From the IMG/VR virus record IMGVR_UViG_3300046559_001153, positions 124,001 through 188,000 of that record: 64,000 nt of DNA; one strand, written 5' to 3'. Under the pieces are notes generated by a model that was not told the DNA's origin, made no database searches, and was given only the letters and a program-made list of their open reading frames with translations. Shown piece by piece: positions 3,150 to 56,883 of this stretch. A program made the position numbers and the translations under genes. How positions within the stretch are numbered: position 1 is the first letter of the stretch; every line of letters starts with the position of its first letter.

Positions 3150-3217
3150 GAAGGCCGCGGAGTTGGCCAGGCTTTGTTGTCTGGCCGTAGTACGGATTGT
3201 TCGAAAGGAATTGCAAA

Positions 3218-4264
3218 ATGGGTGGAAGTAATTGGAGTGATGACACATTCAAGACGAAGGCTACGATGCGGGCGTCATCTCCCACGTCAGGATTTGACCA
3301 CAGCGACAGATCGGCAAAAGCGAAGTTGCAGGGACGCGCAGTTGTGGCACACGCTGCTGTGGCCCCTCAGACCAAGGCTGGTCCGTCCAGCCCGTTTGCT
3401 GGGCAGATCATGCGTGAATCGAGGGATTCAGCCACACACCCGACGACCAAAGCAGTGGCCATTCTGCAAGACGTGACAGGCTCGTTGAACCAGGTGCCGG
3501 AGATCGTGCGGGACGCGTTGCCCAAACTCATGGGGCTCCTCATCCGCAAAGGTTACCTGGAGCATCCACATATCCTGATCGGCGGTATCGGTGATGCCGA
3601 ACCTGACAGGAATGGCGGACCGCCTGATACCATGCCCTTGCAGATCAGCCAGTTCGAGGCGGGGATCGAGATCGACGAGGCGATCAGCAATCTTTTCCTG
3701 GAAGGCGACGGCGGCGGACAGAAGTACGAATCTCATGATTTGGCTATGTACTACATGGCCAGACACACGGCAATGGACTGCCTGGAGAAGCGCGGCGAGA
3801 AGGGTTACCTGTTCATCATCACTGACGAAATGTGTCGTCCGGTGGTGAAGAAGGCTCTCGTCGAGAAGCTGATTGGCGATAAGCTCGAGTCGGACATTCC
3901 GATCGAGGACATCGTCAAGGAATTGGAAGCCAAGTTTGAGGTGTACGTGATCATCCCGAATATGACCACGTACTATGGCGACAGGGAGGTCTTCGACAGC
4001 TGGACTAAGTTGCTCACCAATGCGGTGATCAAACTGGAAGAGCCGTCGGGTATCACAGAGTTGATCGCCACGCAGATCGGGATTGCTGAGGGCAAGACCG
4101 ATGTAACGAGGGTCAAGGATGATCTGCACGAAGTGGGCACGGAACTGTCCGTGGCCGGTGCGGTGACGGATGCTCTGATCAAGTCCGGCGCCAAGGCGGG
4201 CGAGGCAACCGGTGCGTTGGCCGTAGCCGATTCGGGTGAACCGGGCGGTCTGGCACAGGTGTAG
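3218..4264 (+). CDS. von Willebrand factor A (vWA) domain protein
   Basis: MIDAS-like QDVTGS motif, IGGIGDA, EGDGGGQKYESHDLA and FIITDE, typical of a phage/actinobacterial vWA family. Start at ATG 3218 after AAAGGA. Confidence 0.8.
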   Translation: MGGSNWSDDTFKTKATMRASSPTSGFDHSDRSAKAKLQGRAVVAHAAVAPQTKAGPSSPFAGQIMRESRDSATHPTTKAVAILQDVTGSLNQVPEIVRDALPKLMGLLIRKGYLEHPHILIGGIGDAEPDRNGGPPDTMPLQISQFEAGIEIDEAISNLFLEGDGGGQKYESHDLAMYYMARHTAMDCLEKRGEKGYLFIITDEMCRPVVKKALVEKLIGDKLESDIPIEDIVKELEAKFEVYVIIPNMTTYYGDREVFDSWTKLLTNAVIKLEEPSGITELIATQIGIAEGKTDVTRVKDDLHEVGTELSVAGAVTDALIKSGAKAGEATGALAVADSGEPGGLAQV

Positions 4265-4674
4265 TTGTTTGCTGCGGCCGCCGGGGTGTTCCGGCAACTT
4301 TACTACGGGGTGGATCGATATTGAATGGGCCCGGTCCTGGTGACAGGATGCATCTAGCGGGGCCTCCCTGCCGACAATGCCGGCGTGACAGATACCAGCA
4401 GCGAATCTGTTAGTCAATGATTGATGTACGGAAGATTCACAATTGGCGTACGCCGGGGATGGGATTCCTCCGCAAGAAACCGATGTGTTCCGTACATTAC
4501 AGTTCCGAGCTATGACCGGATGGTCATTGCTGACCTTAACCGACTGTCTAGGATTACATATCGAGTCGCAAAGGGTGCACTCAATCCGCAGAAGCCGTGT
4601 GTGCAGGTTAGATCACGGTTATACCGATCCAGGTTGGTAACCAATCCAACTCGCAGCAAGTGACGTTGTGTGTG

Positions 4675-4711: not shown

Positions 4712-4982
4712 GGGGGCGATTGGATTCGACTGATTGCTCGAATTTGTTGTAGCGTGCCGTGGTTGATCAGTTGGCCACGTTAAAAGCTGATCAAAAACCA
4801 ATTGTCGACTGTAACAAGTTGATTCCGGCTGTGGCTGACAAACGGGTCTGTGTGCCCGCAATGGCTGCCTAAGCCAAGCGTGAGTGACGGTTTTATCCGC
4901 ATGGGATGCCTCTAAGAGGCTATGCACGTAGAAGCAGCAGAAGAGACTCTCCAGGACGCGGGTTCGATTCCCGCCGCCTCCA
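4712..4982 (+). ncRNA. ssrA: tmRNA (compact, about 271 nt); predicted tag (A)VDCNKLIPAVADKRVCVPAMAA
   Basis: 5' GGGGGCGATTGGATTCGAC and 3' GCGGGTTCGATTCCCGC-CGCCTCCA give a G3:U70 alanyl acceptor. A pk1-like pseudoknot (CGTGG/CCACG, TGATCAG/CTGATCA) is present, and the internal ORF ends GCT GCC TAA at 4864-4872. Confidence 0.93.
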
Positions 4983-4984
4983 CT

Positions 4985-5059
4985 GTGTCTGTAGCTCAAT
5001 TGGTTTAGAGCGTCTGGTTGTGATCCAGAAGGTCGCGAGTTCAAATCTCGCCAGACACC
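4985..5059 (+). tRNA. tRNA-His (GUG)
   Basis: Cloverleaf: GTGTCTG/CAGACAC acceptor, GCTC D stem, TCTGG-TTGTGAT-CCAGA anticodon arm, GCGAG-TTCAAAT-CTCGC T arm, C73. CCA is not encoded. Confidence 0.93.
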
Positions 5060-5232
5060 TGTGGCAGTGTACCTCGTGACGCATCCCGAGCGGTGTGCGT
5101 TGGTTGTTGAGATTAGTTATACGCCGGATTGGCCGGTAGTCGCTAATTGAGACATCGACTAGACGAGCCACAGGGGCAATCGCTCGAGGCTCCGCCGGTA
5201 GCCGCCTTCTGCAGAGGGCAACCGGCTTTTAT

Positions 5233-5346
5233 GCTCTGTCCCGTTGAGTGGATCGCGATTGCTCCACCTTGTATGGGGGCATCCGTTCTGACGGTAGGTA
5301 CGAAGATGCAAGGATCTTCGGACAGGTTCGATTCCTGTACAGGGCA
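5233..5346 (+). tRNA. Atypical tRNA-Thr(UGU)-like RNA with a 42-nt, two-hairpin variable region
   Basis: GCTCTGT/ACAGGGC acceptor, ACAGG-TTCGATT-CCTGT T arm, anticodon loop CT-TGT-AT. The D arm is degenerate. Confidence 0.55.
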
Positions 5347-5359
5347 GTTTCTCAGCAGT

Positions 5360-5408
5360 GGCCCGCCAGGCTACCACCCCGCAAGGGACAGGTCTGGCGG
5401 GCCTTTTT
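5360..5408 (+). terminator. Rho-independent terminator ending the RNA cluster
   Basis: GGCCCGCCAG/CTGGCGGGCC stem followed by TTTTT. Confidence 0.8.
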
Positions 5409-5410
5409 CG

Positions 5411-5428
5411 TAACTTTTTACAAAGTTA
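5411..5428. promoter_or_regulatory. Palindromic motif TAACTTT-N4-AAAGTTA, copy 1
   Basis: TAACTTTTTACAAAGTTA, 14 nt before ATG 5443. Confidence 0.75.
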
Positions 5429-5442
5429 TTAGAGGAGTGAGG

Positions 5443-5826
5443 ATGACACCGAAGGAAGCTCTGATCGAAGCCAAGCAGCTCATTGAACGCTGGGGCTGGC
5501 TAAAGGGGTCCTTTGCGAGGGACCGTTACGGGAAGTCGATCTGGATCGCGGATGCGAAAGCCCATATTGCTGCTGGTGATTGTGGCGGATTCTGCGTTTC
5601 TGGCGCTATTGCAGCTGCAGTCGGCCTGTCTCCCGATTTCCAGTCCAGTCTCCGGCTAGTCGCGTTCTATGGCACGATTGACGCTACCAGGGCCCGATTC
5701 AGCCAGGCCGTTGGGGTGGTCAATCAGGATATCGCCGGGTGGAATGACAAGCCCGAACGAACCTTACAAGAGGTTCTGGACGCGTTGGACCGAGCTATTG
5801 CTCTCAGCGACGAGGTGTCAGCGTGA
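5443..5826 (+). CDS. DUF6197-like phage protein, paralog 1
   Basis: GW...FC.SGAI...WND...EV motifs shared with 9082 and 10614. The family name is recalled, not searched. Confidence 0.7.
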   Translation: MTPKEALIEAKQLIERWGWLKGSFARDRYGKSIWIADAKAHIAAGDCGGFCVSGAIAAAVGLSPDFQSSLRLVAFYGTIDATRARFSQAVGVVNQDIAGWNDKPERTLQEVLDALDRAIALSDEVSA

Positions 5827-6161
5827 TCACACCAGAACAACTCATGCAGATGGTGCGAGAGGCAGATGAAGGCGATCCTGACTCACCTCGACACATTAAG
5901 ACTATGGCGGCCGAGATACTGTGGCTATACAGCCGTCTCAGCTGCCTGGTCGAAATGCTCAAGCGATTTCCAGAAGACGCGGATCCCGATTTCCCGGAGA
6001 TCAGCCAATTGCATGGTCCTTTGTGGCACAAGGTGGCCCAGATGACCGGGCTGGGTTCGACGTCAGCAAAGCAGCTCTGCATGGTATTGAGACAAGATCC
6101 GGATCACATCAAACTTCAACCCGAACAGGAGACCGATGATGAGGGCGATAATCACGTGTGA
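5823..6161 (+). CDS. Hypothetical protein
   Basis: GTGA-coupled, 112 aa. Confidence 0.65.
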   Translation: MITPEQLMQMVREADEGDPDSPRHIKTMAAEILWLYSRLSCLVEMLKRFPEDADPDFPEISQLHGPLWHKVAQMTGLGSTSAKQLCMVLRQDPDHIKLQPEQETDDEGDNHV

Positions 6162-7356
6162 TTTGGGCTTCGGCGATAGCGGCAAGGGATCGATTGTTGA
6201 CGCACTGGTTCGTAAGTACCAAAGCAAGCTGGTCATTCGCTACTGCGGCGGCGCCCAGGCCTCGCACGCCGTAACAACTGAAGATGGCCGGGTGCACAAG
6301 TTCTCACAGTGGGGAGCGGGCACACTGGCCGGAGCGATGACTTACCTGCACTACCCGATGATCATCGATCCGTTGGCCATGCGGAACGAAGCTGAGTCAT
6401 TGAAATCCAACTTCGGATTCGGGGATCCGTGGAGGCTGCTGACCATTCATCCTGATTGTCTGATCGCAACGCGGGTGCACAAATACGTCAACCGACAATC
6501 GGCCGAGACAATTCAAAATGGTTCGTGCGGCATGGGGATTGGGGCTACACGGGAGTACTGGCTCAAGTACGGGTCTGACGCGATCGTTGCTTCTGATTTG
6601 GTGTCCAATTCGAGTCAGCTCGTCTGGTATGACAGGCTGATTGGTAAGCTCGAGCTAATGATTGCCAGGTACGAGTTACAGCACAAGTTCAGCGCTGTGC
6701 TTGAAGCCCGGGCTTTGCTAGATATTGCGACACTCCATTTGGCTTGGCGGGTTCTTCCATTAGAGTTCAAACAGCCCAAAAGTGACGAAGTCGTGATCTT
6801 CGAGGGATCTCAGGGGCTGCTGTTGGATCAGCATTACGGGTGTTCTCCTCACACGACGTGGAGTGATGTGACTGCGCGATCAGCTCTTGAACTCATTCAT
6901 CGAAATGACGTTATTTTCACGTCTGTTCGACAGCTCGGGATCATCCGAGCGTACATGACGAGACATGGCGCTGGCCCGTTGCCTACCGCGATGAGCCCCG
7001 AAGAGTTATCTGTGATGGGATTGAGCGATCCCTACAATCCTCACAACGAATACCAGGGCAGAATGCGATTTGGATGGCCTGATGTGGCTTTGCTCGAGTA
7101 CGCATTGGATAGTGCCCAAGGGATTGATTCGCTGGCAGTCAATTGCGTTGATCAGGTTGATGGCAAGTCGTTGCACGTTCGTATGCGTGCCGACGAGTGT
7201 CATCGTTGGACGGATTCCGTCTACAGATCGCCAGGTGAGTGGACGGCCTTGCCGTGGGTCGAGATCGCCGACACAATCGATAGCATCTGCCCGATCAGCG
7301 TTATCGGGCGTGGCCCGAAGGCTAGCGATAAAATCTTTTTGAAGGATTCATTCTGA
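6136..7356 (+). CDS. purA: Adenylosuccinate synthetase (PurA)-like ligase, divergent
   Basis: Motifs GFGDSGKG, GGAQASH, GSCGMGIG, IFEGSQGLLLD, RAYMTRHGAGPLPT, RFGWPD and LAVNCVD. Confidence 0.85.
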   Translation: MMRAIITCDLGFGDSGKGSIVDALVRKYQSKLVIRYCGGAQASHAVTTEDGRVHKFSQWGAGTLAGAMTYLHYPMIIDPLAMRNEAESLKSNFGFGDPWRLLTIHPDCLIATRVHKYVNRQSAETIQNGSCGMGIGATREYWLKYGSDAIVASDLVSNSSQLVWYDRLIGKLELMIARYELQHKFSAVLEARALLDIATLHLAWRVLPLEFKQPKSDEVVIFEGSQGLLLDQHYGCSPHTTWSDVTARSALELIHRNDVIFTSVRQLGIIRAYMTRHGAGPLPTAMSPEELSVMGLSDPYNPHNEYQGRMRFGWPDVALLEYALDSAQGIDSLAVNCVDQVDGKSLHVRMRADECHRWTDSVYRSPGEWTALPWVEIADTIDSICPISVIGRGPKASDKIFLKDSF

Positions 7357-7931
7357 TGCGAGAATCATTTCGAATGTGGTTTGAGGTGCCCGACCAACCT
7401 GACGCCGGGACGGTCGAGGAGTGGGACAAATTCGAAGAGGACGCAAGGAAGCATCATCCAGTACGCTTCTTCCTGTCGTGGACGTTGCCGATCCGGCTGT
7501 CACGCACATGGCGACAGCTTGTGCGTGAGCCGTGGTATTGGCTCAAGTGCCGTCTGTGGCACCAGTACAACGTCGTCCGCATTCAGACCCTGCCACCAAC
7601 GTGGAATGACCGGGACGAAGTGATGCTCCACGCGTGTTTCCAGTGCCTGGTCGATTTTATCGAGAAAGAAAATCCCTTTGAATACGGAGCAGGCGCCGAA
7701 GTGCAGGAGCCCAGGAGGAAAGCCGATATCGAACTGGTTGCTCTTTACGACTGGTGGATTTTACGTCCTGTGCTGCTGAGGAGAATCGACGATGTGATCG
7801 ACCGATATCCCAGAGGCACAGCCCCGCGGGACGCGTATGAGCAGGCCGGGATTTCCTACAGCGATCTTCGAGCTGAAGATCAGGCAATGTTGACCAGGCT
7901 CATCGCCGTTCGAAAGTACATGTGGACATGA
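7356..7931 (+). CDS. Hypothetical phage protein (Trp-rich)
   Basis: 191-aa ORF coupled to the upstream stop (TGATG). Confidence 0.7.
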   Translation: MRESFRMWFEVPDQPDAGTVEEWDKFEEDARKHHPVRFFLSWTLPIRLSRTWRQLVREPWYWLKCRLWHQYNVVRIQTLPPTWNDRDEVMLHACFQCLVDFIEKENPFEYGAGAEVQEPRRKADIELVALYDWWILRPVLLRRIDDVIDRYPRGTAPRDAYEQAGISYSDLRAEDQAMLTRLIAVRKYMWT

Positions 7932-31567: not shown

Positions 31568-31681
31568 GCTGCGGAGGCTTGGTGTGATCAAAGCACACGA
31601 TGGCGAAAGCATCCCGGGATCAGTGTTGCCCGGCAGCCATGATTGGTATAAGACCCGTGGGTTCGATCCCCACCCGCAGCG
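31568..31681 (+). ncRNA. tRNA-like RNA (acceptor, D and T arms) lacking a canonical anticodon arm
   Basis: GCTGCGG/CCGCAGC acceptor, GCTT/AAGC D stem, GTGGG-TTCGATC-CCCAC T arm, and a 61-nt insert between the D and T arms. Confidence 0.55.
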
Positions 31682-41674: not shown

Positions 41675-44600
41675 ATGTCAATCCTGTCTGGCTCCGGCAG
41701 CCTGCTCCAGCCGATGCGCCCTGCGGCCCACGAGGATGAGCCTGACAGCCTCACAGACATGTCCAAAGCGCGTCAAAGGCTGTTTGACCACACCTTGACG
41801 GCTGCGCAAGGCCTGGAGCCCCTGGCGAACTCCAAGCACACGTTAAAGCTGACCGACGTCCACTATTCTGGCCCGGACGAGTATTCTCTAAAGGACCAGA
41901 AGAAAGCCATTCTGACAGGTGACACGCTTGGCCGGACGCTGAAAGGCACATTCCAGCTTCTGGATAACGTCACAGGCCAGCTGGTCGACCAGAAACGGGT
42001 GACACTGGCTAACGTGCCTTACCGGACGGACCGTGGTACGTTCATCCACAATGGGACTGAATACGCCGTTCGAAATCAGATGCGGTTGTTGCCTGGTGTC
42101 TTTACCCGTATTCGAGGCAACGGCGAGATTGAAGCCCACACGAACGTTATGCCTGGGAAGGGGCTGAGCCACCGCTACTTTCTAGATCCTGACAAAGGCG
42201 TGTTCTACATTCGCGTAGCCCAGTCCAAGACGCCGCTAGTGTCGTTGCTCACCGCAATGGGCGTGACCCACCATCAATTGCGTGACGCCTGGGGCCCCGA
42301 GTTGGCCGCGACCAACTTGACGCATAACGATCCGGCTGACGTAAAGAAACTGGCCGGGAAATTTCTCCCGCGGATCCCCGAGAATCAGACCGAGGCGCAC
42401 ACGACTGAGCAACTGGTAAATGCCTTTCAGGCCATGGAGCTCGATCCGGAAGTCACTAAACGAACGCTCGGGCACCCATTTACCAATGTCGGACCGGAGA
42501 CCATTCTTCGAACGACACAGAAACTGCTTCAATTGCAAAAGGGCGAAGTTGAGCCCGACGATCGTGACCACCTGGCCTACCAGAAAATCATGGCGCCCGA
42601 GGATTTGTTCTCGGAACGGATTCGTCGCGATGCTGGCAACATTCGCCGTCAGCTGTTGTTCAAAGCCAGTCAGCGTGGCAATCTGCAGGGCATTGGTTCC
42701 CGACCGTTCCAGAAGCAATTGAACTCGGTCATCCTCACCAGCGGTGTCGGTACGGGTCTTGAGGAAACATCACCGCTCGAACTGCTGGACAAGATGTCAA
42801 CGATCACCAGCATGGGTGTCGGTGGACTACCAAGCACGACAGCCATTCCGTTGGAGTCCCGAGCCGTACAGCCAAGCCATCTCGGATTCATGGATCCACT
42901 GAAGACGCCCGAAAGCGAGGCGGCTGGCGTTATTCTGAATATCGCCGGACAGGTCCGTCGTAAGGCTGATGGGCAGCTCGCCAAACAATTCACCAATCTG
43001 CACACGGGGCAACTCGAGTGGCGTACCCCGCAGGACGTGGCTGATTCAGCCATCGCCTTCCCGGGTGAAATGGCCAAACCGGGCAAACGAATCATAGCCA
43101 TGTTGAATGGTAAGCTGCAGTATGTGTCCAAAGCCGATGTCAAATACGAGCTGCCGCATTTCGAACACGTCTTCAGCGACGTCACCAATCTGGTGCCGAT
43201 GAAGTCGGCTTTGAAGGGCCAGCGGGCAGTGATGGGTGCCCGTATGTTGACGCAAGCCCTGCCGCTCGAGAACCCCGAAGCCCCATTCGTTCAGTCGGCT
43301 GTTCCGGGAACGGGCGGGCAGAAGAGTTTTGACGAACACTTCGGTGGATTCATGGGTGCCGTGCGAGCCAAGCAGGGTGGTCAGGTCACTGCCGTATCGC
43401 CGGAAGCCATCACGGTCAAGCACGACGACGGAACGACGCAGAACTACGAGTTGTATGACTCGTTTCCGTTCAATCGCCGTAGCCGACTGCACAATACGCC
43501 AATGGTGCAACCGGGCCAGCGTGTCGGTCCGGACGATCTTCTGGCTAAGTCCAACTTCACCAACGACAACGGGGCAATCGCGATCGGCAAGAACGCCTAC
43601 ATCGGATACATGCCGTATGGAGCCGGCACCTACGAAGACGCCCAGCTGGTGTCGGAGAGCTTCGCCAAGAAACTGCGATCAGAACATTTGTACCAGCACG
43701 ACGCGACCTGGGGTGACGCACTCGATAAGAAAGGCAAAGCGCCATACGTGTCGCTGTTCCCGTCGAAGTTTGACCGAAAGCAGTTGGACACGATCGACGA
43801 GGATGGGGTCGTCAAGCCGGGCACGGTTGTTGATTACGGCCACCCACTCATTCTGCTGGCAAAGGGGCGAGAGCACTCGCAAAGCAAAGTGCATCGCAAG
43901 GGCCAGCTACAGCACACCGACGCGTCGGTGACCTGGTCGTACAACTCACCCGGTATCGTCCGCGACGTAGTGAAGACAGACAAAGGACCGATGGTCACTG
44001 TGACGTCTATGCGGTCGACACAGGAGTCAGACAAGTTGAGTGACCGATTCGGCGCCAAGGGTGTTATCGGCAAGATTCTGTCGGACGACTTGATGCCGCG
44101 TGACAGCACGGGTCGCCCATTCGACATGTTACTGAATCCGGCTGGTATCCCGTCGCGACTCAATCCGGTGAAGATCCACGAAGCCACACTCGGCAAGATT
44201 GCGGAAAAGACTGGCAAGCCGTACAAAATTGAGGATTTTTCGAACATTGCCGACCTGCGAGCCTTCGTCGAACAGGAAGCCCAGAAGCATGGCGTACCCG
44301 ACACAGAGACGGTCTTCGACCCAGGTACCAACAGATACATCCCCGGCGTGAAGACTGGCGTGCAGTGGATCATGAAGCTGCACCATATCGCCGAAGACAA
44401 AGAACAGGGTCGCGGTGCCTCGGGTGGTTACACACTCAGCGGTGTACCGGCCAAGGGTGGTGACGGTGAGTCAAGTAAGAAGCTGTCCATGGGGGAAACG
44501 AATGCCCTGTTGTCTCACGGTGCGTTGAATCTGCTGCGTGATTCGCAATTGTTACGAGGCCAGCGAAACGAACCATATTGGCTGGCCTTCATGCAGGGGC

Positions 44601-46093
44601 ACCGCCCGCCCGAGCCCGGTATCCCGCTTGTTTACGAGGAATTCATCAACGAATTGAAAGCTGCTGGGATCAACCCAGTTCGCAACGGGGCCAGCATGAA
44701 CGTCATGGCCTTGACGAACAAGGACATTGACCAGTTGTCGGGCGGCCGCGAATTGCAAAATGGGAACACGGTCAACTTTGACGGTGATCTGAGCCCGGTG
44801 GCCGGCGGCTTGTTCGATCCAGCTTTGACTGGCGGGCATATGGGCCGCCGATGGTCGCACGTAACGCTGGCCGACCCGATGCCCAATCCGGTGATGGAAG
44901 AGCCTATACGTAAACTGCTGGCCCTGACTAAGAACAAATTCGAAGGGGTTCTGGCTGGGACTGAATCGATCGGTTCGCACGGTACAGGACCGCAAGCTCT
45001 GTTCAAAGCCCTGCAGGGGATCAATCTGGACAAGGAGCTTTTGCTCGCCAGGATGCAGATCAAGTCGGGCAAGAAAACAGCCCGTGATGTGGCCGTTCGC
45101 AAACTAGGGTATCTCAAAGCAGCCAAGTCGCTGGGGATCCACCCGTCAGACTGGATGCTCGACAAAGCACCAATTCTTCCCCCCCTCTTTCGTCAGGTGG
45201 CGAAGATTTCCGATTCGGGCCAACCAATTATTTCCGATGCCAATTACCTTTACAAAGAGCTGATTGACGCGAATACGACGCTCAAGAAGCTGAAGGGGGT
45301 GGTGGGTGAAAACGTGGGTCAAGAACGCCTTGCGTTATATAACTCGTTCAAAGCAGTCACTGGCCTGGGCGACCCAAGCCATCCGAAACTGGTCGAGAAG
45401 GGAGTCAAAGGCCTGCTTGCCGGGATCTTCGGAAGTAGTCCCAAGTGGGGCTCAGTCCAGTCCCGATTACTCAGTACCCCTGTGGATATTGTTGGGCGTG
45501 CCACTGTACAGCCCAACGCCGACCTCGACATGGATTCCATTGGACTTCCCGAAGAACGAGCCTGGACCGTCTACAAAAACTTCATAGTCCGTCGCCTTAA
45601 ACGCCAAGGCATGCCGTTGACGAATGCCCTGCAGGCTCACAAGGATCAGACCCCGCTGGCGAAGAAAGCCCTGCTTGATGAGCTGGAGACGCGACCAGTT
45701 ATCTACAGCCGGGCGCCCATCCATCATAAGTACGGGATCATGGCCGCTTGGCCGCAGCTGGTGAAAGGTAACGCCGTTCACTTGTCACCGCTGGTGACGG
45801 TTGGATTTGGTGCGGACTTTGATGGCGATCAGATGAACTACCATGTGCCTGTGAGTGATGCGGAAGTGCAGGACGCTGTCGAGCGAATGCTGCCGTCTCG
45901 CAATTTGATCAGCCCGGCCGACTTTCGAACGCCCATGTTCATGCCACGGCACGAAATGCTAATGGGATTGTTCGAATCAACCAGACCGGATAGAATTGGT
46001 CGAAGTATCACATTTCGCAATAAGCAAGACGCTATTGCCGCTTATCGACGCGGAGAGTTGACCGTGCAGGATTCGGTGACAATTCTCCATTGA
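41675..46093 (+). CDS. rpoBC: DNA-directed RNA polymerase beta subunit fused to the N-terminal catalytic half of beta'
   Basis: Beta motifs: VPYRTDRGTFIHNGTE, DPLKTPES, DKLSDRFGAKGV, LNPAGIPSRLN, KLHH, ELKAAGIN. Beta' motifs after about 44696: GGLFD, PILPP, SDANYLY, PVDIVGR, SRAPIHH and catalytic GADFDGDQM (45809-45829). Confidence 0.95.
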   Translation: MSILSGSGSLLQPMRPAAHEDEPDSLTDMSKARQRLFDHTLTAAQGLEPLANSKHTLKLTDVHYSGPDEYSLKDQKKAILTGDTLGRTLKGTFQLLDNVTGQLVDQKRVTLANVPYRTDRGTFIHNGTEYAVRNQMRLLPGVFTRIRGNGEIEAHTNVMPGKGLSHRYFLDPDKGVFYIRVAQSKTPLVSLLTAMGVTHHQLRDAWGPELAATNLTHNDPADVKKLAGKFLPRIPENQTEAHTTEQLVNAFQAMELDPEVTKRTLGHPFTNVGPETILRTTQKLLQLQKGEVEPDDRDHLAYQKIMAPEDLFSERIRRDAGNIRRQLLFKASQRGNLQGIGSRPFQKQLNSVILTSGVGTGLEETSPLELLDKMSTITSMGVGGLPSTTAIPLESRAVQPSHLGFMDPLKTPESEAAGVILNIAGQVRRKADGQLAKQFTNLHTGQLEWRTPQDVADSAIAFPGEMAKPGKRIIAMLNGKLQYVSKADVKYELPHFEHVFSDVTNLVPMKSALKGQRAVMGARMLTQALPLENPEAPFVQSAVPGTGGQKSFDEHFGGFMGAVRAKQGGQVTAVSPEAITVKHDDGTTQNYELYDSFPFNRRSRLHNTPMVQPGQRVGPDDLLAKSNFTNDNGAIAIGKNAYIGYMPYGAGTYEDAQLVSESFAKKLRSEHLYQHDATWGDALDKKGKAPYVSLFPSKFDRKQLDTIDEDGVVKPGTVVDYGHPLILLAKGREHSQSKVHRKGQLQHTDASVTWSYNSPGIVRDVVKTDKGPMVTVTSMRSTQESDKLSDRFGAKGVIGKILSDDLMPRDSTGRPFDMLLNPAGIPSRLNPVKIHEATLGKIAEKTGKPYKIEDFSNIADLRAFVEQEAQKHGVPDTETVFDPGTNRYIPGVKTGVQWIMKLHHIAEDKEQGRGASGGYTLSGVPAKGGDGESSKKLSMGETNALLSHGALNLLRDSQLLRGQRNEPYWLAFMQGHRPPEPGIPLVYEEFINELKAAGINPVRNGASMNVMALTNKDIDQLSGGRELQNGNTVNFDGDLSPVAGGLFDPALTGGHMGRRWSHVTLADPMPNPVMEEPIRKLLALTKNKFEGVLAGTESIGSHGTGPQALFKALQGINLDKELLLARMQIKSGKKTARDVAVRKLGYLKAAKSLGIHPSDWMLDKAPILPPLFRQVAKISDSGQPIISDANYLYKELIDANTTLKKLKGVVGENVGQERLALYNSFKAVTGLGDPSHPKLVEKGVKGLLAGIFGSSPKWGSVQSRLLSTPVDIVGRATVQPNADLDMDSIGLPEERAWTVYKNFIVRRLKRQGMPLTNALQAHKDQTPLAKKALLDELETRPVIYSRAPIHHKYGIMAAWPQLVKGNAVHLSPLVTVGFGADFDGDQMNYHVPVSDAEVQDAVERMLPSRNLISPADFRTPMFMPRHEMLMGLFESTRPDRIGRSITFRNKQDAIAAYRRGELTVQDSVTILH

Positions 46094-52455: not shown

Positions 52456-52694
52456 TGTACATCGAAGCCATCGAACGATTCGGTAAGCCGCCCGTGCGGT
52501 TGGAAGTCAGTCAGGTCGTCATTTACCGAGACGACGGAACCCCCATCTCGCTGGCCAGTTTGTACGGCCCCGATGGGGCCATTTTCGTTGAAACGGCCGA
52601 GGATCCGGAAAAATTCAACAAGGCCCTGCAGACACTGGGGATCGATAAAACAGTCATCGTCGACAACCTGGTCATGTCCGAACCAACCCAATAA
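52455..52694 (+). CDS. Small hypothetical protein
   Basis: TGATG-coupled; MYIEAIERFGKPPVRLEVSQVVIY. Confidence 0.65.
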   Translation: MYIEAIERFGKPPVRLEVSQVVIYRDDGTPISLASLYGPDGAIFVETAEDPEKFNKALQTLGIDKTVIVDNLVMSEPTQ

Positions 52695-52709
52695 CTTTTT
52701 ACAAAGTTA
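52692..52709. promoter_or_regulatory. Palindromic motif, copy 5
   Basis: TAACTTTTTACAAAGTTA (identical to copy 1), 22 nt before ATG 52732. Confidence 0.8.
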
Positions 52710-52731
52710 CAGAGACCAGCAGGTAGGCAAG

Positions 52732-55700
52732 ATGCCCGCGACCTTCATAGGGAAAATGGGTCAGCTGCTGGTCAACGAGGCTCTGCCCGAAGATCTGCGT
52801 AACGGTAAGACCCTGGATTCAAGGGGCTTGACCGACCTGCTGCGGGATGTGGCTGAACGTCACCCCGACAAGTACCGGGACATCTCACACAAGTTGACCC
52901 AGCTGGGTGAAGACGCAGCTCAGCAACTCGGCGGCTATTCGTTCGGGCTCAATGCCATGCGACGGGCCGGGTCAGCCAATGTCATTCGCGATCGCATCAA
53001 AAGCCAGGTTCAGTCACTGCTCGACAATGACAACCTGTCAGATGATGCACGCGAGTCCCAGATCGTCAAACTCCTGGGTCAGGCCCAGTCAGAACAAGAG
53101 AACGCCGTCTACGACGAGAGTTTGAAAGAGAACAATCCGATCGCCTTGCAGATCAAGTCAGGCGCTCGCGGCAAGAAGATGGCTCTCAATTCTCTGCGTG
53201 GGTCCGATCTGCTGTATGTCGACCATCGCGACCGGCCAGTGCCCATCCCCGTCCTGCGGAGTTACCCTGAGGGCCTGTCGCCGGCCGAGTATTGGGCTGG
53301 GGCCTATGGTGCTCGTCACGGCATTGTCAGTGTGAAGCTGGGCACAGCCCAGTCAGGCTTCCTGGCGAAACAACTCAATCAAGCGACCCACCGGCTGATT
53401 GTGACGCATGAGGATGACGCTCCGGTCGATACGGTCCGAGGCCTGCCAGTCCCTGTCGACGATAACGACAATGTGGGGGCCTTGCTGGCCCATCCGGCTG
53501 GTGGTTTTGGGCGGAACACGGTTCTGACGCCCAAGGTTCTGAAGTCCCTGCATGATGGCGGCATTCAGAGAATTCTGGTACGCAGCCCGACTGTTGGCGG
53601 GGCACCTGATGGGGGTCTCTACTCACGCGATGTTGGCATTCGAGAAACTGGCGGTCTGCCGCCCAAAGGAACGTTCTCCGGTCTGCAGGCCGGTCAGGCG
53701 ATCTCTGAGCCGTTGTCGCAGGCCACCTTGTCCGCCAAGCACGCAGGGGGCGTTGCCGGAGCATCCAAATCAGTGTCAGGCTTTGCCTGGATCAACGCCC
53801 TGGTTCAGATCCCCAAGGTATTTCCTGGCGGGGCAACGCATTCAGAAGTAGACGGGCGTGTGCAGCAGATTACCAAGGCACCTGGCGGCGGTTTGCACGT
53901 GCAGGTGAACGGACTGGAGCATTACGTGCCGCACGGGCTGGCTTTGACAGTTGCCCCGGGCGACGCGGTTGAAGCTGGCGACGTGCTCAGTGAGGGCATT
54001 CCCAGCCCGGCCGAGATCGTCAAGCACAAGGGAATTGGTGAAGGTCGCCGGTACTTTGTGGATGCCATGCGTAAAGCATTGACCGACTCTGGTGTTCGAA
54101 ACAATCGCCGAAATCTCGAACTCATCAGTCGTGGTCTGATCAATCACGTCGAGCTCGACGCGGAGATCGGCGAACACGCGCCAGACGACGTTGTCCCATT
54201 CGACACGATCGAACGGGATTACGAGCCGAGAGAAGGCAGTCACACGCTGCCTGTCCACCAGGCAATCGGCCAGTATCTCGAGAAGCCCTACCTGCACCAC
54301 ACGATTGGTACGAAGGTCAAATCGAGCATGTTGCCGGACTTCAAGCATTTTGGAGTTGAATCGGTTCACGTGCACAAAGATCCGCCGCTATTCCATCCGC
54401 TCATGGTTCGCGGTATGTACAACTTGCAGCACGACCCGGACGCCATGACAAGGAATCTAGGTTCAGGGCTGCAGGCAAGCTTCCTGGACTCGGTCCACCG
54501 TGGCGGCGGCAGCGACGAAAAGGGTACCAGCTATGTTCCCGGCCTGGCCCGTACTGTGGATTTTGGCCGCATTGGCGTTATCCGGCCGACTGTGGTTACA
54601 CCGCAGAGATCGACTATGAAAATCGCAGCTGGCAGCCCGATTGCCCCGGCTCTCGACCCGAAACCGGCTCCCATCAAACCACTGGCGCCACCACAGCCTC
54701 AAATAAAACCGATTGCTCCTCCACCGTCGCCGGCTTTGCAGGCGAAGCCTCAATCTGTGCTGGGCGATAGTTCGATCAACGGGTTCGGTGACTTCTTCCA
54801 TCATGCCGGTAATCTGCTGCGTGGGCCCGGGTACGACGCCGGGATGGCACCGGCAACTGCCGGTTTCAAGAACACGATGACGCCGCAGCAGTTTGGCCAA
54901 CAGATGCGGACTGATCTTCCCGGTCTGCCTAATCCGGTTGCACCAGCCGCACAACCCGGAGTATGGGATCAAGCGAAAGCCATAGCGCCTGGCCTGGCTA
55001 CCAATCTCGGGGTTAATGTAGCTGGGCAGCAGATAGCAAAAAATACGTTGGTGCGAGCCGTTCCCAGATTAGGAGTAGGTGCCGCCTCAAAGCTCTTGCC
55101 TCTCGGTATCGGCGCCGCAGTTGCCGAGCCGATTGGGTGGCTCGGTAAAAAGACCGGAATTCCAGGCTTCGAAAACGATGCAGCATATGACACCAATGCG
55201 TATCGTCAAGAGGCCGAAGGTTTGCACTACGGGATGCCGGCCGGCTGGCGTCAGGACACCAATCGACCGTGGTATATTCGAATGGGAGACTGGTTGGCCA
55301 ATGACGCAGGAACAGCCGTAATGCAGCCTCAGACGGCCGTCATGAACGCGTTTGGCAAGTCGAGCGATGACGCCTTGGGAATTCCTTCTCGCGACGAGAT
55401 GGGAGACTTATCCAAGCTCGAAACGGGCAAGCTCTATGACCTGTTTACACAGCTCCATAACGCCACCAAAGCCGGTCCCCACACTGATCTGAGGATTGGC
55501 GATCCGGAGCAGGGGCTGCACTCTTGGGCCGTGCCGAAGGGTTTACCCGAGTCTGGGAAGAAGCATCTGGCTGTCCACCAGCCAATTCACGAGCATTCCT
55601 ACGGGGGCTGGTCGGGCACGATTCCCGAGGGCGAATACGGGGCCGGTACGGTCAAGAGTCAGATCAAGGGCAAGGCCCTGGTGACCGAGTCGGGTCCGGG

Positions 55701-56883
55701 CAAACTGCATTTTACGACAGCTCACATGAAGCATCCCGAGCGGTTCACTGTGGTGGCGCCAAAAAGCTTCGGTGAAAACAATCACCTGCTGCTCAACACG
55801 ACGCCGACCGAGCCGCTGCCGTACCAGAAGATCCACTACAAGAAAGTTCCGACCGAACAGGTCGAAGGAAAGTTGAAGGAGTTAGAACCCGGTTCGTCGG
55901 TGCAGGCCAAGATTGACGGTGCATCGAGCCTGGTCAAACTGCTCAAGGATCAGCTCGAACTGTATTCGTACCGGGCATCAAAGCCGACAGGAAAACCAAT
56001 CATTCACACGGAGAAGGTGTTACATGGCCGGCCTCGGATTGAGATCCCTCCTGAGTACCACAACAGCATCCTGCGCGGTGAGTTACACGGGGTCAAGCAA
56101 GACTCCGAAGGAAAAGAAACGGTTATTCATCCCAGCGAACTTGGTGGTATCCTCAACTCAACGATTGCTCACTCGCTGGCAAAACAAGAGACCTCAGGCG
56201 TTCGGCTCCGTAACGCACTGTTCGACATTCAACAGGTTGGCAACACGCCAATTGACTTCTCCAAGACGCCATATTCTGAACGTCGGGAACACTTGAAGAG
56301 CATTCTGCCGTCGCTGCCGCAGGACATTTTTCACTTGACCGACGAAGCCAAGACACCGGAAGATGCGCTGAAGTTGTGGAAAGACATTGGTAGCGGGGAT
56401 CACCCGAAAACTGAGGAAGGAATCGTTATCCACTCTCCAACGGGCAAGCCCCAGAAGGCTAAGTACATTGAAGATCACGACGTTCACATCCGCGGTATTT
56501 TCCCTGGCGAAGGCCGTCTTGCTGGAACTCATGCCGGCGGCTTTGAGTACTCTGCTGAGCCTGATGGTCCTATTCTCGGCCGTGTTGGCACTGGCTTTTC
56601 TGACGATGTTCGTCGCCAGATGCATGATCGACCTGACGATTTCGTGGGGCGGGTTGCCCGGGTGAAGTCCCAGGAGAAGTTGCAGTCGGGTGCGTTGAGA
56701 GCTCCGGCTTATATCGCTCTCCACGAAGATTACCCAGTGTCGTCGGCTTTGAATAAGGCGGCCGAGCTAGAACGCGTCCGTCTGCGTGTGAAAGAATTGG
56801 CAGAGAAAAAGGCGACCGCTTCTCCAATTTCTCTGGCCAGAGAACGCCTTCAAGCTATCCGAGCGAAAAATTTGGGCCTATAA
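52732..56883 (+). CDS. rpoC: Fusion protein: RNA polymerase beta' C-terminal half + Pro/Gly-rich linker + LigD 3'-phosphoesterase domain + ATP-dependent DNA ligase
   Basis: Beta' motifs: KSGARG, SYPEGLSPAEY..GAYGARHG...TAQSGFL, GLQAGQAISEPLSQATLSAKHAGG. PE motifs: QLH...HTDLR, SWAVPKG, H..SY, GTIPEGEYGAGTV. Ligase motifs: KIDG, RGEL, LFDI, EEGIVI, KAK, GRVGTGFSD. Start moved to ATG 52732 (AGGTAGG RBS). Confidence 0.92.
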   Translation: MPATFIGKMGQLLVNEALPEDLRNGKTLDSRGLTDLLRDVAERHPDKYRDISHKLTQLGEDAAQQLGGYSFGLNAMRRAGSANVIRDRIKSQVQSLLDNDNLSDDARESQIVKLLGQAQSEQENAVYDESLKENNPIALQIKSGARGKKMALNSLRGSDLLYVDHRDRPVPIPVLRSYPEGLSPAEYWAGAYGARHGIVSVKLGTAQSGFLAKQLNQATHRLIVTHEDDAPVDTVRGLPVPVDDNDNVGALLAHPAGGFGRNTVLTPKVLKSLHDGGIQRILVRSPTVGGAPDGGLYSRDVGIRETGGLPPKGTFSGLQAGQAISEPLSQATLSAKHAGGVAGASKSVSGFAWINALVQIPKVFPGGATHSEVDGRVQQITKAPGGGLHVQVNGLEHYVPHGLALTVAPGDAVEAGDVLSEGIPSPAEIVKHKGIGEGRRYFVDAMRKALTDSGVRNNRRNLELISRGLINHVELDAEIGEHAPDDVVPFDTIERDYEPREGSHTLPVHQAIGQYLEKPYLHHTIGTKVKSSMLPDFKHFGVESVHVHKDPPLFHPLMVRGMYNLQHDPDAMTRNLGSGLQASFLDSVHRGGGSDEKGTSYVPGLARTVDFGRIGVIRPTVVTPQRSTMKIAAGSPIAPALDPKPAPIKPLAPPQPQIKPIAPPPSPALQAKPQSVLGDSSINGFGDFFHHAGNLLRGPGYDAGMAPATAGFKNTMTPQQFGQQMRTDLPGLPNPVAPAAQPGVWDQAKAIAPGLATNLGVNVAGQQIAKNTLVRAVPRLGVGAASKLLPLGIGAAVAEPIGWLGKKTGIPGFENDAAYDTNAYRQEAEGLHYGMPAGWRQDTNRPWYIRMGDWLANDAGTAVMQPQTAVMNAFGKSSDDALGIPSRDEMGDLSKLETGKLYDLFTQLHNATKAGPHTDLRIGDPEQGLHSWAVPKGLPESGKKHLAVHQPIHEHSYGGWSGTIPEGEYGAGTVKSQIKGKALVTESGPGKLHFTTAHMKHPERFTVVAPKSFGENNHLLLNTTPTEPLPYQKIHYKKVPTEQVEGKLKELEPGSSVQAKIDGASSLVKLLKDQLELYSYRASKPTGKPIIHTEKVLHGRPRIEIPPEYHNSILRGELHGVKQDSEGKETVIHPSELGGILNSTIAHSLAKQETSGVRLRNALFDIQQVGNTPIDFSKTPYSERREHLKSILPSLPQDIFHLTDEAKTPEDALKLWKDIGSGDHPKTEEGIVIHSPTGKPQKAKYIEDHDVHIRGIFPGEGRLAGTHAGGFEYSAEPDGPILGRVGTGFSDDVRRQMHDRPDDFVGRVARVKSQEKLQSGALRAPAYIALHEDYPVSSALNKAAELERVRLRVKELAEKKATASPISLARERLQAIRAKNLGL

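What the first reader, a model, noticed from the sequence alone, without database searches (positions are those of the whole stretch)
5233..5346. tRNA-Thr(UGU)-like RNA with two extra hairpins in the variable region
Seen: intact acceptor (G1-C72, C2-G71, A73) and T arm, and a UGU anticodon loop. The variable region is 42 nt and folds as CCGT-TCTG-ACGG plus CGAAGAT-GCAAGG-ATCTTCG; the D arm is degenerate; total length 114 nt. Established: tRNA-Thr is normally class I with a 4-5 nt variable loop. Inference: this could be a tRNA mimic or decoy (for example for anticodon nucleases or ThrRS) rather than a decoding tRNA.
Basis: partly seen in the sequence, partly recalled or inferred. Interest (0 to 1): 0.6.

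Follow-up and report, generated by a model that had tools for sequence, protein, structure and literature searches.

The report
Oversized tRNA-like gene in jumbo phage
A soil jumbo phage carries, just after its own tmRNA and tRNA-His genes, a 114-base RNA gene with the top half of a tRNA and an over-built lower half. A second 114-base element of the same design lies elsewhere in the genome, and what either one does is unknown.

Summary
Window 5233-5346 (+) has a 7-bp acceptor stem and A73. A canonical T arm (ACAGG-UUCGAUU-CCUGU) abuts the acceptor stem. G18-G19 sit at tRNA positions, and the two described hairpins are present. ARAGORN and Rfam do not call it.

Context: the window is part of a 224-kb IMG/VR phage that encodes its own multisubunit RNA polymerase. 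The gene order is tmRNA, tRNA-His, 173-nt spacer, element, intrinsic terminator.

New findings:
- A second intergenic element (31568-31681) is also exactly 114 nt, with its T arm at the same positions. It is the best non-self hit of a covariance model built from the finding alone.
- All 24 shared base pairs are kept in both elements, 15 of them with changes on both sides.
- A joint model ranks class II tRNAs (Ser, Leu) first among real tRNAs. The first "extra" hairpin is therefore the class II variable arm, and only the 7-bp hairpin is truly extra.
- The UGU anticodon is one of three stem registers.

No homologue turned up in 50 related phages or in the pattern and BLAST searches of public collections. 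The nearest relative has the tmRNA but only a decayed tRNA-His remnant.

Verdict: a real tRNA-like RNA derived from a class II tRNA, probably non-decoding. The decoy idea is untested.

The parts
4712..4985 (+). Phage-encoded tmRNA, first gene of the RNA cluster
   Evidence: Rfam RF00023, 117 bits. It is 91% identical to the tmRNA of relative L009, with compensatory changes in the acceptor and T stems.
4985..5059 (+). tRNA-His(GUG), canonical, starting at the last base of the tmRNA match. C73 is present but no G-1 is encoded.
   Evidence: ARAGORN.
5060..5232 (+). 173-nt structured spacer. A closed domain spans 5060-5172 (UGUGGC/GCCACA). A hairpin spans 5194-5226 and is followed by UUUUAU just before the element's first base. 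Bases 5173-5183 can pair over 11 bp with 5255-5265 inside the element.
   Evidence: Folds; inverted repeat I4.
5233..5346 (+). E1, the finding: a 114-nt tRNA-like gene
5233..5239 (+). Acceptor 5' strand GCUCUGU. It pairs with 5339-5345 (ACAGGGC); the discriminator A is at 5346.
   Evidence: Read from the sequence; present in the MFE and centroid folds.
5242..5257 (+). D arm: 3-bp stem CGU/GCG with a loop that carries G18-G19
   Evidence: Sequence. The pairs are kept with changes on both sides in E2.
5261..5280 (+). Anticodon-like hairpin GCUCC-ACCUUGUAUG-GGGGC, with three possible registers (loop CCUUGUA, CUUGUAU or UUGUAU)
   Evidence: Its counterpart in E2 is CCGGG-AUCAGUGUUG-CCCGG.
5283..5294 (+). 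Hairpin CCGU-UCUG-ACGG, the equivalent of the class II long variable arm, 2 nt after the anticodon-like helix
   Evidence: The covariance model aligns it to the variable arms of tRNA-Ser and tRNA-Leu. It is kept in E2 as GCCA-UGAU-UGGU.
5301..5320 (+). Supernumerary perfect 7-bp hairpin CGAAGAU-GCAAGG-AUCUUCG
   Evidence: inverted repeat I7. It is absent at this position in E2.
5322..5338 (+). T arm ACAGG-UUCGAUU-CCUGU
5360..5409 (+). Intrinsic terminator (GGCCCGCCAG...CUGGCGGGCC + UUUUU) closing the RNA cluster. It is conserved in L009.
   Evidence: (I6).
5410..5432 (+). Palindrome GTAACTTTTTACAAAGTTAT just upstream of the RBS of the DUF6197 gene (5443-5826). One of 11 copies in the genome.
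31568..31681 (+). E2: second 114-nt tRNA-like element. Acceptor GCUGCGG/CCGCAGC, discriminator G, T arm GUGGG-UUCGAUC-CCCAC at positions 90-106. It is intergenic and is directly followed by the same palindrome.
   Evidence: No Rfam or ARAGORN call.

Best explanation
E1 is a genuine tRNA-derived gene built on a class II (long-variable-arm) tRNA scaffold and enlarged to 114 nt by a supernumerary 7-bp hairpin and a lengthened, slippery anticodon helix.

Inferred steps. It is transcribed as the last RNA of a tmRNA, tRNA-His, spacer, E1 unit that ends at an intrinsic terminator. Host RNase P would release it at G5233. Its 3' end would be trimmed to A5346 and CCA added, since no CCA is encoded.

The top half of a tRNA is intact: the acceptor/T-arm minihelix and the D-loop/T-loop elbow. 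The bottom half departs from what decoding needs. The RNA therefore most likely acts as a tRNA-shaped, non-decoding molecule that engages host tRNA-binding factors (processing enzymes, a synthetase that ignores the anticodon, or a tRNA-directed defence nuclease), rather than reading codons.

E2 (31568-31681) is a second member of the same design.

Shown: the structure, the context, the E1/E2 relationship and the class II affinity. Inferred: transcription, processing and the non-decoding role.
For: - Structure: 7-bp acceptor, abutting T arm with the UUCGAUU loop, G18-G19 and a 3-bp D stem. Every helix is fully paired.
- Genome-wide, such T-arm plus acceptor arrangements occur only at tRNA-His, E1 and E2.
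- Placement: E1 sits between tRNA-His and a conserved terminator on the strand of the tmRNA. No gene is called there in the JGI annotation.
- Model R1, built from E1 alone, finds E2 as the best other hit in 64 kb (18 bits, E about 0.004). That is above the true tRNA-His.
- E1 and E2 are both 114 nt, with T arms at positions 90-106.
- All 24 shared pairs are paired in both elements, 15 with changes on both sides. With slid partners only 38-49% pair.
- Model R2 (E1 plus E2) ranks class II tRNAs first among the tRNAs of related phages: Leu-UAA 23.7 bits and Ser-UGA 23.6 and 23.3 bits. Their variable arm is aligned to hairpin 5283-5294.
- Non-decoding features: C8, the three-register anticodon stem, C33/U37 in the clean register, and rejection by ARAGORN and Rfam.
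Against: - No expression or end-mapping data. RNA runs matched only conserved bacterial tmRNA parts.
- No homologue outside this phage lineage, so no independent covariation. Searches: 50 related jumbo-phage records, the phage database and pattern scans.
- The one syntenic relative lacks E1 and has let the neighbouring tRNA-His decay. The module is therefore dispensable in that lineage.
- The E1/E2 alignment was fitted to the E1 structure and has only two rows. If the two elements descend from different class II tRNAs, the 'compensatory' pairs are inherited rather than selected.
- The fold energy is only modestly better than shuffles (z = -1.84).
- No partner protein is encoded. TROVE, SmpB, CCA-adding enzyme, class IIa synthetase core and RtcB are all absent.
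Confidence: 0.45

Rival explanations
1. E1 is a tRNA pseudogene. It began as a class II (or chimeric) tRNA gene, picked up insertions or duplications in a fast-turnover phage tRNA cluster, and is no longer used. Its intact helices reflect a recent origin.
For: - Absent from the nearest relative, which carries a visibly decayed tRNA-His remnant at the same locus.
- Related phages hold other one-off aberrant tRNA-like genes. One example is a 101-nt element with two tandem Ile anticodon arms in G020, which has no copy in its relatives.
- Canonical features are lost: U8, the anticodon loop and the single nucleotide at position 26.
- No detector calls it.
Against: - All six helices are perfectly paired, while the loops and junctions have drifted far from tRNA consensus. 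That is the pattern expected under selection on structure.
- A second element of identical length and helix plan exists 26 kb away.
- The sequence is invariant across several soil and rhizosphere samples, though this carries little information.
- The genome is tightly packed, with about 85% in ORFs of at least 120 aa.
Confidence: 0.3
2. E1 is a working, aminoacylated decoding tRNA with an enlarged variable region. It could be a tRNA-Thr(UGU). It could also be a Ser/Leu-type body with a non-cognate or expanded anticodon loop that recodes or shifts frame.
For: - G1-C72, C2-G71, A73 and a CUUGUAU loop (U33, A37) in one register.
- Two related phages carry a canonical tRNA-Thr(UGU) just downstream of their tmRNA (L117, L122).
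- ACA makes up 21% of the phage's Thr codons.
- After in-silico removal of 5281-5295, ARAGORN calls a tRNA-Thr(UGU) whose variable arm is the 7-bp hairpin, but with a shifted acceptor.
- Precedent: allo-tRNAs with long variable arms and longer anticodon stems are functional (PMC5389517, read).
Against: - The UGU register needs an A.G mismatch and competes with two better-paired registers.
- C8, 4-5 nt (depending on the register) at the position of nucleotide 26, and a 42-nt variable region have no precedent among decoding bacterial tRNAs (my knowledge).
- The class II body conflicts with Thr identity.
- E2 has no usable anticodon loop either.
- E1 shows no sequence kinship to the family's tRNA-Thr genes, which have an AUCGUUC T loop.
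Confidence: 0.12
3. E1 is a cut-down paralogue of the neighbouring tmRNA, keeping only its tRNA-like domain. It would act through SmpB or the ribosome-rescue machinery.
For: - Colinear similarity of E1 14-40 to tmRNA 7-36 (GAGUGGAUCGCGAUUGCUCCACCUUGU against GAUUGGAUUCGACUGAUUGCUCGAAUUUGU): 23 of 30 columns, shuffle p about 0.02 (D1, 52).
- Identical GGUUCGAUUCC, preceded by GGAC in both (D3).
- Adjacency to the tmRNA, and A73.
Against: - The similarity is marginal: 79 of 5000 random genome segments score as well.
- The T-loop motif is generic.
- The acceptor lacks G3-U70 (it has U3-G70), so there is no AlaRS identity.
- No Rfam tmRNA hit covers E1. The only one is a 22-bit permuted-tmRNA artefact that borrows the real tmRNA's T arm.
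- No SmpB gene in the phage.
Confidence: 0.05
4. E1 is a bacterial Y RNA (YrlA-type) tRNA mimic that works with a Ro60/Rsr protein.
For: - Phage YrlA RNAs are known (PMC4201824).
- A related phage (G036) has an array with YrlA-like topology next to a weak TROVE hit.
Against: - No TROVE protein in this genome.
- The Rfam YrlA and Deinococcus Y RNA models do not match E1 meaningfully. The 22-bit hit lies on the tmRNA/tRNA-His junction, and the other is 16 bits at E 6.3.
- The topology is wrong. E1 has open acceptor ends, whereas in YrlA the acceptor-like stem is closed by a loop and the termini form the Ro-binding helix.
Confidence: 0.02

Closest known systems
Class II bacterial tRNAs (tRNA-Ser, tRNA-Leu, tRNA-Tyr)
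   Same: - 7-bp acceptor with an abutting 5-bp T stem.
- UUCGAUU-type T loop and G18-G19.
- 3-bp D stem.
- A 4-bp/4-nt hairpin 2 nt after the anticodon helix, in the place of the long variable arm.
- Class II tRNAs are the best real-tRNA hits of the E1+E2 model.
   Different: - 114 nt against about 85-90.
- An extra perfect 7-bp hairpin between the variable arm and the T arm.
- 4 nt instead of 1 between the D stem and the five-pair anticodon stem.
- C8.
- Anticodon helix extendable to 7 bp, with ambiguous register and no canonical loop in the best-paired register.
- Not called by ARAGORN or Rfam.
allo-tRNAs / tRNA-Sec-like tRNAs of soil bacteria and phages (Mukai et al. 2017, PMC5389517)
   Same: - Non-standard tRNAs with a long variable arm and a longer anticodon stem.
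- Found in soil metagenomes and phages.
- Proposed as suppressors or regulatory RNAs.
- Co-occurrence with an unusual tRNA-His lacking G-1 is reported there.
   Different: - allo-tRNAs are defined by 8/4 or 9/3 acceptor/T-stem geometry, whereas E1 is 7/5.
- They have a single variable arm and a normal 7-nt anticodon loop.
- Their length is below 100 nt.
tmRNA tRNA-like domain
   Same: Only the acceptor/T-arm half of a tRNA is canonical. A73. Encoded next to the phage tmRNA. Weak colinear sequence similarity in the D-loop/helix-2 region.
   Different: No G3-U70, no mRNA-like domain or pseudoknots, and a closed four- or five-way junction instead of a long helix 2.
YrlA / bacterial Y RNAs with a tRNA-like module (Chen et al. 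2014, PMC4201824)
   Same: tRNA-mimicking non-coding RNA of about 100-120 nt, also found in phages. T and D arms are conserved while the rest varies.
   Different: YrlA is circularly rearranged relative to tRNA (acceptor closed by a loop) and is encoded within 4 kb of Ro60. This genome has no Ro60.
Phage T4 stable RNAs C and D (species 1 and 2), recalled from memory and not checked here
   Same: Stable RNAs of about 120-140 nt and unknown function, encoded at the end of a phage tRNA cluster and matured with the tRNAs.
   Different: T4 is unrelated to this phage.

Membership tests
Canonical decoding tRNA (Rfam RF00005 / ARAGORN definition) | Scores above threshold with tRNA covariance or heuristic models | tested here: not met
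   ARAGORN makes no call at default settings. In Rfam the best clan hit is tRNA-Sec at 16.3 bits against a gathering score of 47, E 3.5.
Canonical decoding tRNA (Rfam RF00005 / ARAGORN definition) | 7-bp acceptor, 5-bp T stem, T loop UUCRANY, G18-G19 | tested here: met
   Read directly from the sequence; present in the MFE and centroid folds.
Canonical decoding tRNA (Rfam RF00005 / ARAGORN definition) | 5-bp anticodon stem with a 7-nt loop carrying U33 and a purine at 37; U8; one nucleotide at position 26 | tested here: not met
   The clean 5-bp register gives C33 and U37. The U33/A37 register needs an A.G mismatch. C8 replaces U8, and 4 nt lie between the D stem and the five-pair stem.
tRNA-Thr | Class I body with a 4-5-nt variable loop; G35-U36; G1-C72 and C2-G71 | tested here: inconclusive
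   The acceptor pairs are present and UGU is available in one register. However, the body is class II-like, and E1 shows no similarity to the tRNA-Thr(UGU) genes of related phages.
Class II tRNA | Long variable stem-loop starting 2 nt after the anticodon stem; 3-bp D stem | tested here: met
   Hairpin 5283-5294 aligns to the variable arms of tRNA-Ser and tRNA-Leu, and class II tRNAs top the R2 hit list. The D stem is C10-G25, G11-C24, U12-G23.
Class II tRNA | Aminoacylation by SerRS, LeuRS or TyrRS | not testable with these tools
   Needs a biochemical assay. A73 (E1) would fit Leu or Tyr, and G73 (E2) would fit Ser, by established identity rules.
allo-tRNA | 8/4 or 9/3 acceptor/T-stem configuration | tested here: not met
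   E1 is 7/5. C8 cannot pair with U106 to give an 8/4 arrangement. The definition was taken from PMC5389517.
tmRNA | G3-U70, resume codon and tag reading frame, pseudoknots; Rfam RF00023 or RF04321 score | tested here: not met
   The pair is U3-G70. No RF00023 hit covers E1, and the RF04321 hit of 22 bits borrows the real tmRNA's T arm.
YrlA / Y RNA | Ro60 (TROVE) gene within about 4 kb; termini forming the Ro-binding helix; match to the YrlA model | tested here: not met
   No TROVE hit in the 224-kb genome, with positive controls working. No meaningful RF02553 or RF01053 hit on E1. The acceptor ends are open.

The most novel reading that the evidence does not exclude
E1 and E2 are the founding members of an undescribed class of about 114-nt 'expanded class II' tRNA-like RNAs in phages that encode their own RNA polymerase. 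They would be matured like tRNAs but used off the ribosome. Possible roles include decoys or sponges for host tRNA-directed defence nucleases (some of which cut class II variable loops), anticodon-independent substrates that tie up a synthetase, and RNase P punctuation marks that define transcript ends.
Probability: 0.2. Interest if true: 0.7.

Novelty: new variant of a known kind. Interest (0 to 1): 0.5.

Why it matters
Phage tRNA genes are now seen as counter-defence tools against host nucleases that cut tRNAs, and tRNA mimics such as tmRNA and Y RNAs show how the tRNA shape gets reused. Two structurally matched but sequence-divergent 114-nt tRNA-like genes, invisible to standard finders, would show that phage tRNA repertoires hold a hidden non-decoding layer. 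They would also give a concrete RNA to test against tRNA-targeting immunity, RNase P processing and anticodon-independent synthetases. If they turn out to be relics, they illustrate how phage tRNA clusters decay, and they warn against reading function into any intact acceptor/T-arm pair.

Tried and rejected
- Exact and degenerate DNA pattern scans found nothing related. The 34-mer from E1 and a 27-mer from the tmRNA gave no hit in viral contigs. A tmRNA 22-mer gave no hit in metagenome contigs.
- The pattern GATTGCTC-N45-75-GGTTCGATTCC gave 40 hits in viral contigs. All were ordinary tRNAs. The recurring 79-nt span was an unrelated upstream hairpin plus a tRNA-Thr.
- The T-arm plus acceptor 23-mer in genome-contig hit only a Dojkabacteria tRNA-Ser-like gene. 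That is a coincidence of the acceptor and T arm.
- Protein-anchored synteny gave one true syntenic relative (L009), which lacks E1. Other homologues of the 355-aa neighbour have no RNA genes beside them.
- For E2, the AAA-ATPase neighbour gave a 66% relative, but on a 1.6-kb contig too short to reach the element. The upstream 207-aa protein gave only 30% relatives. The AAA gene is not conserved in the 50 related phages.
- Covariance models R1 and R2 over 50 related records found nothing real. The 13.5-bit R1 hits lie inside a 955-aa ORF and lack a T loop.
- Reads: DNA contigs are identical to the window, and RNA contigs cover only conserved bacterial tmRNA segments. There is therefore no variation and no expression evidence.
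- ARAGORN at lowered thresholds produced only junk overlapping calls.
- Intron or insertion test by in-silico single deletions. E1 becomes callable only with a shifted acceptor, so a simple 'tRNA plus one intron' reading is rejected.
- The permuted-tRNA reading of E1 is rejected, because the T arm directly precedes the 3' acceptor strand that pairs with the 5' end.
- MAFFT alignment of E1 and E2 is poor. Their relation is structural, not sequence-level.
- A codon-usage test for avoidance of ACA shows none.

Full report
**Observation.**
Window 5233-5346 (+) reads GCUCUGU-CC-CGU-UGAGUGGAUC-GCG-AUU-GCUCC-ACCUUGUAUG-GGGGC-AU-CCGU-UCUG-ACGG-UAGGUA-CGAAGAU-GCAAGG-AUCUUCG-G-ACAGG-UUCGAUU-CCUGU-ACAGGGC-A.
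- The acceptor, the T arm and the 7-bp hairpin persist in the minimum-free-energy and centroid folds (-43.1 kcal/mol, z = -1.84).
- ARAGORN does not call it. Lowering thresholds gives only noise.
- Rfam's best match is tRNA-Sec at 16.3 bits, E 3.5.

The arrangement is not chance. I scanned the whole 224-kb genome for T arms with a 5/5 stem whose next seven bases find a 7/7 partner 60-140 nt upstream. That scan returns only tRNA-His, this element and one further element.

**Corrections to the description.**
- The UGU loop (CUUGUAU) requires an A.G mismatch. Five clean pairs (C30-G46, U31-G45, C32-G44, C33-G43, A34-U42) give the loop CCUUGUA instead, which has C33 and U37. The MFE uses a third register. 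U28-A49 and G29-C48 can lengthen the helix to 7 bp.
- The D arm has three good pairs with G18-G19 at their canonical positions. That is the class II pattern rather than degeneration. However, C8 replaces U8.
- CCGUU occurs twice (positions 9-13 and 51-55), so a rival long helix 9-20/50-62 exists.

**Context.**
- The window is bases 124001-188000 of a 224,270-bp IMG/VR virus record with direct terminal repeats and 55.5% GC.
- The virus encodes a multisubunit RNA polymerase.
- It was found in soil and rhizosphere metagenomes.
- On the + strand the order is: tmRNA 4712-4985 (117 bits); tRNA-His 4985-5059; a structured 173-nt spacer ending in a hairpin plus UUUUAU; the element; an intrinsic terminator at 5360-5409; then a palindrome and the DUF6197 gene.
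- The genome has no other ARAGORN tRNA.
- It has no TROVE/Ro60, SmpB, CCA-adding enzyme, class IIa synthetase core or RtcB.

**Relatives.**
- One syntenic relative was found, a 27-kb Logan contig (L009). Its flanking protein is 63% identical and its tmRNA is 91% identical, with compensatory changes.
- L009 has the same terminator and downstream genes. Between tmRNA and terminator it has only 78 nt, which align to tRNA-His as a decayed remnant.
- E1 and the spacer are absent from L009.
- Sixty-one IMG/VR phages share the polymerase at 40-55% identity. Nine of the 50 searched have a tmRNA scoring above Rfam's cut-off, usually with canonical U34 tRNAs nearby. Two have a tRNA-Thr(UGU) just downstream of the tmRNA.
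- None has a detectable E1 homologue.
- The phage database and the pattern scans were also empty.
- DNA contigs from other samples are identical across E1, and RNA contigs cover only conserved tmRNA segments.

**A second element.**
- The T-arm scan found E2 at 31568-31681. It is intergenic, 12 nt after a stop codon, and is directly followed by the same palindrome.
- It is also exactly 114 nt, with a perfect 7-bp acceptor, discriminator G, and its T arm at positions 90-106.
- Rfam and ARAGORN miss it.
- A covariance model built from E1 alone finds E2 as the best other hit in the 64-kb window (18 bits, E about 0.004 with rough calibration). That is above tRNA-His.
- In the model-fitted alignment the acceptor, D stem, anticodon-like hairpin (5 bp, 10-nt loop starting with A and ending with UG), the 4-bp/4-nt hairpin two bases later, and the T arm are all paired in both elements.
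- Fifteen of the 24 shared pairs differ on both sides. Sliding the partners gives 38-49% pairing.
- Caveats: there are two sequences only, and the alignment is fitted to the structure.
- E2 lacks the 7-bp hairpin at E1's position. It carries about 19 extra bases in the D region instead.

**What kind of tRNA.**
- The joint model, run without filters on tRNA-bearing loci of related phages, ranks class II tRNAs first. tRNA-Leu(UAA) scores 23.7 bits and two tRNA-Ser(UGA) score 23.6 and 23.3 bits. Their long variable arm aligns to hairpin 5283-5294.
- E1 is therefore a class II scaffold with one supernumerary hairpin, not a class I tRNA-Thr with two.
- E1 shows no specific similarity to the family's tRNA-Thr genes.

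**Other leads tested.**
- A marginal colinear similarity to the 5' part of the neighbouring tmRNA (p about 0.02) is noted, but it is not enough for homology.
- The simple 'tRNA plus intron' reading, the permuted-gene reading and the YrlA reading are rejected.

**Interpretation.**
- The intact top half, the perfect helices, the drifted junctions and the existence of a matched second copy favour a maintained, tRNA-shaped RNA that is matured like a tRNA and does not decode (confidence 0.45).
- A recent pseudogene remains a serious rival (0.3). The locus is dispensable in the nearest relative, related phages hold other singleton aberrant tRNA-like genes, and there is no expression or orthologue evidence.
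- A true decoder is less likely (0.12).

Noticed in passing
window 31568-31681 (+): Second 114-nt tRNA-like element (E2): perfect acceptor, T arm GUGGG-UUCGAUC-CCCAC, discriminator G. It is intergenic and missed by ARAGORN and Rfam, and it has the same helix plan as the finding.
   Followed up: yes
window 4712-4985 and 4985-5059: The phage tmRNA has an unusually long predicted tag that contains Cys and ends in ...PAMAA. The tRNA-His(GUG) starts at the tmRNA's last base and has C73 but no encoded G-1.
   Followed up: partly
window 4283-4375 and 4578-4660; L009 5945-6045 and 6100-6185: Two non-coding blocks upstream of the tmRNA are conserved between the window and L009. One is a 7-bp hairpin with three compensatory pairs around an almost invariant 14-nt loop (UGUGCAGGUUAGAU). 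This may be another small RNA or a tmRNA leader element.
   Followed up: partly
window 5413, 22623, 31685, 39637, 52694, 59657 (11 sites in the genome): Palindrome RTAACTTTTnnAAAAGTTAY lies 5-15 nt upstream of the RBS or start codon of + strand genes, often just after a terminator. It is also present in L009. It is a likely promoter or operator for the phage polymerase, or a 5'-UTR hairpin.
   Followed up: partly
window 6136-7356 (+), with 3197-4264 and 7356-7931: An adenylosuccinate-synthetase homologue (PF00709, 137 bits). In relatives it is followed by HD and NUDIX genes and is consistently paired with the 355-aa protein of 3197-4264, even on bacterial-looking contigs. This may be a PurZ-type 2-aminoadenine pathway.
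   Followed up: no
window 41675-46093 and 52573-56883 (+): Multisubunit RNA polymerase genes. One is a beta/beta'-N fusion. The other carries an Rpb1 domain 5 fused to a LigD 3'-phosphoesterase domain and an ATP-dependent ligase domain.
   Followed up: no
L131 600-2400 (G036, IMGVR_UViG_3300047160_020099): An array of repeated RNA units. Each is closed by the helix GCCUGAC/GUCAGGC and holds a hairpin ACAUC/GAUGU. Several units then run T arm, acceptor 3' strand, 6-7-nt loop, acceptor 5' strand and D arm. This is the YrlA (Y RNA) or permuted-tRNA topology. A weak TROVE hit (20 bits) lies 2-3 kb downstream.
   Followed up: partly
L135 2847-2947 (G020): A 101-nt tRNA-like gene with two tandem anticodon-type arms (UAU and GAU, both Ile) separated by a CCC-GUAA-GGG hairpin. 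ARAGORN does not call it, and it is absent from the four related phage records searched (G010, G012, G029, G030).
   Followed up: partly
L128 1493-1565 (-) (G031): A related phage carries a tRNA with a CUA anticodon, which ARAGORN labels tRNA-Pyl. It is a possible amber suppressor.
   Followed up: no
L041 (unrelated IMG/VR phage), about 8704 and about 8580 (-): Two tRNA genes of 116-117 nt with normal acceptor, D and T arms and about 40 extra bases in the anticodon region. They become callable after an in-silico deletion of 42-46 nt.
   Followed up: no
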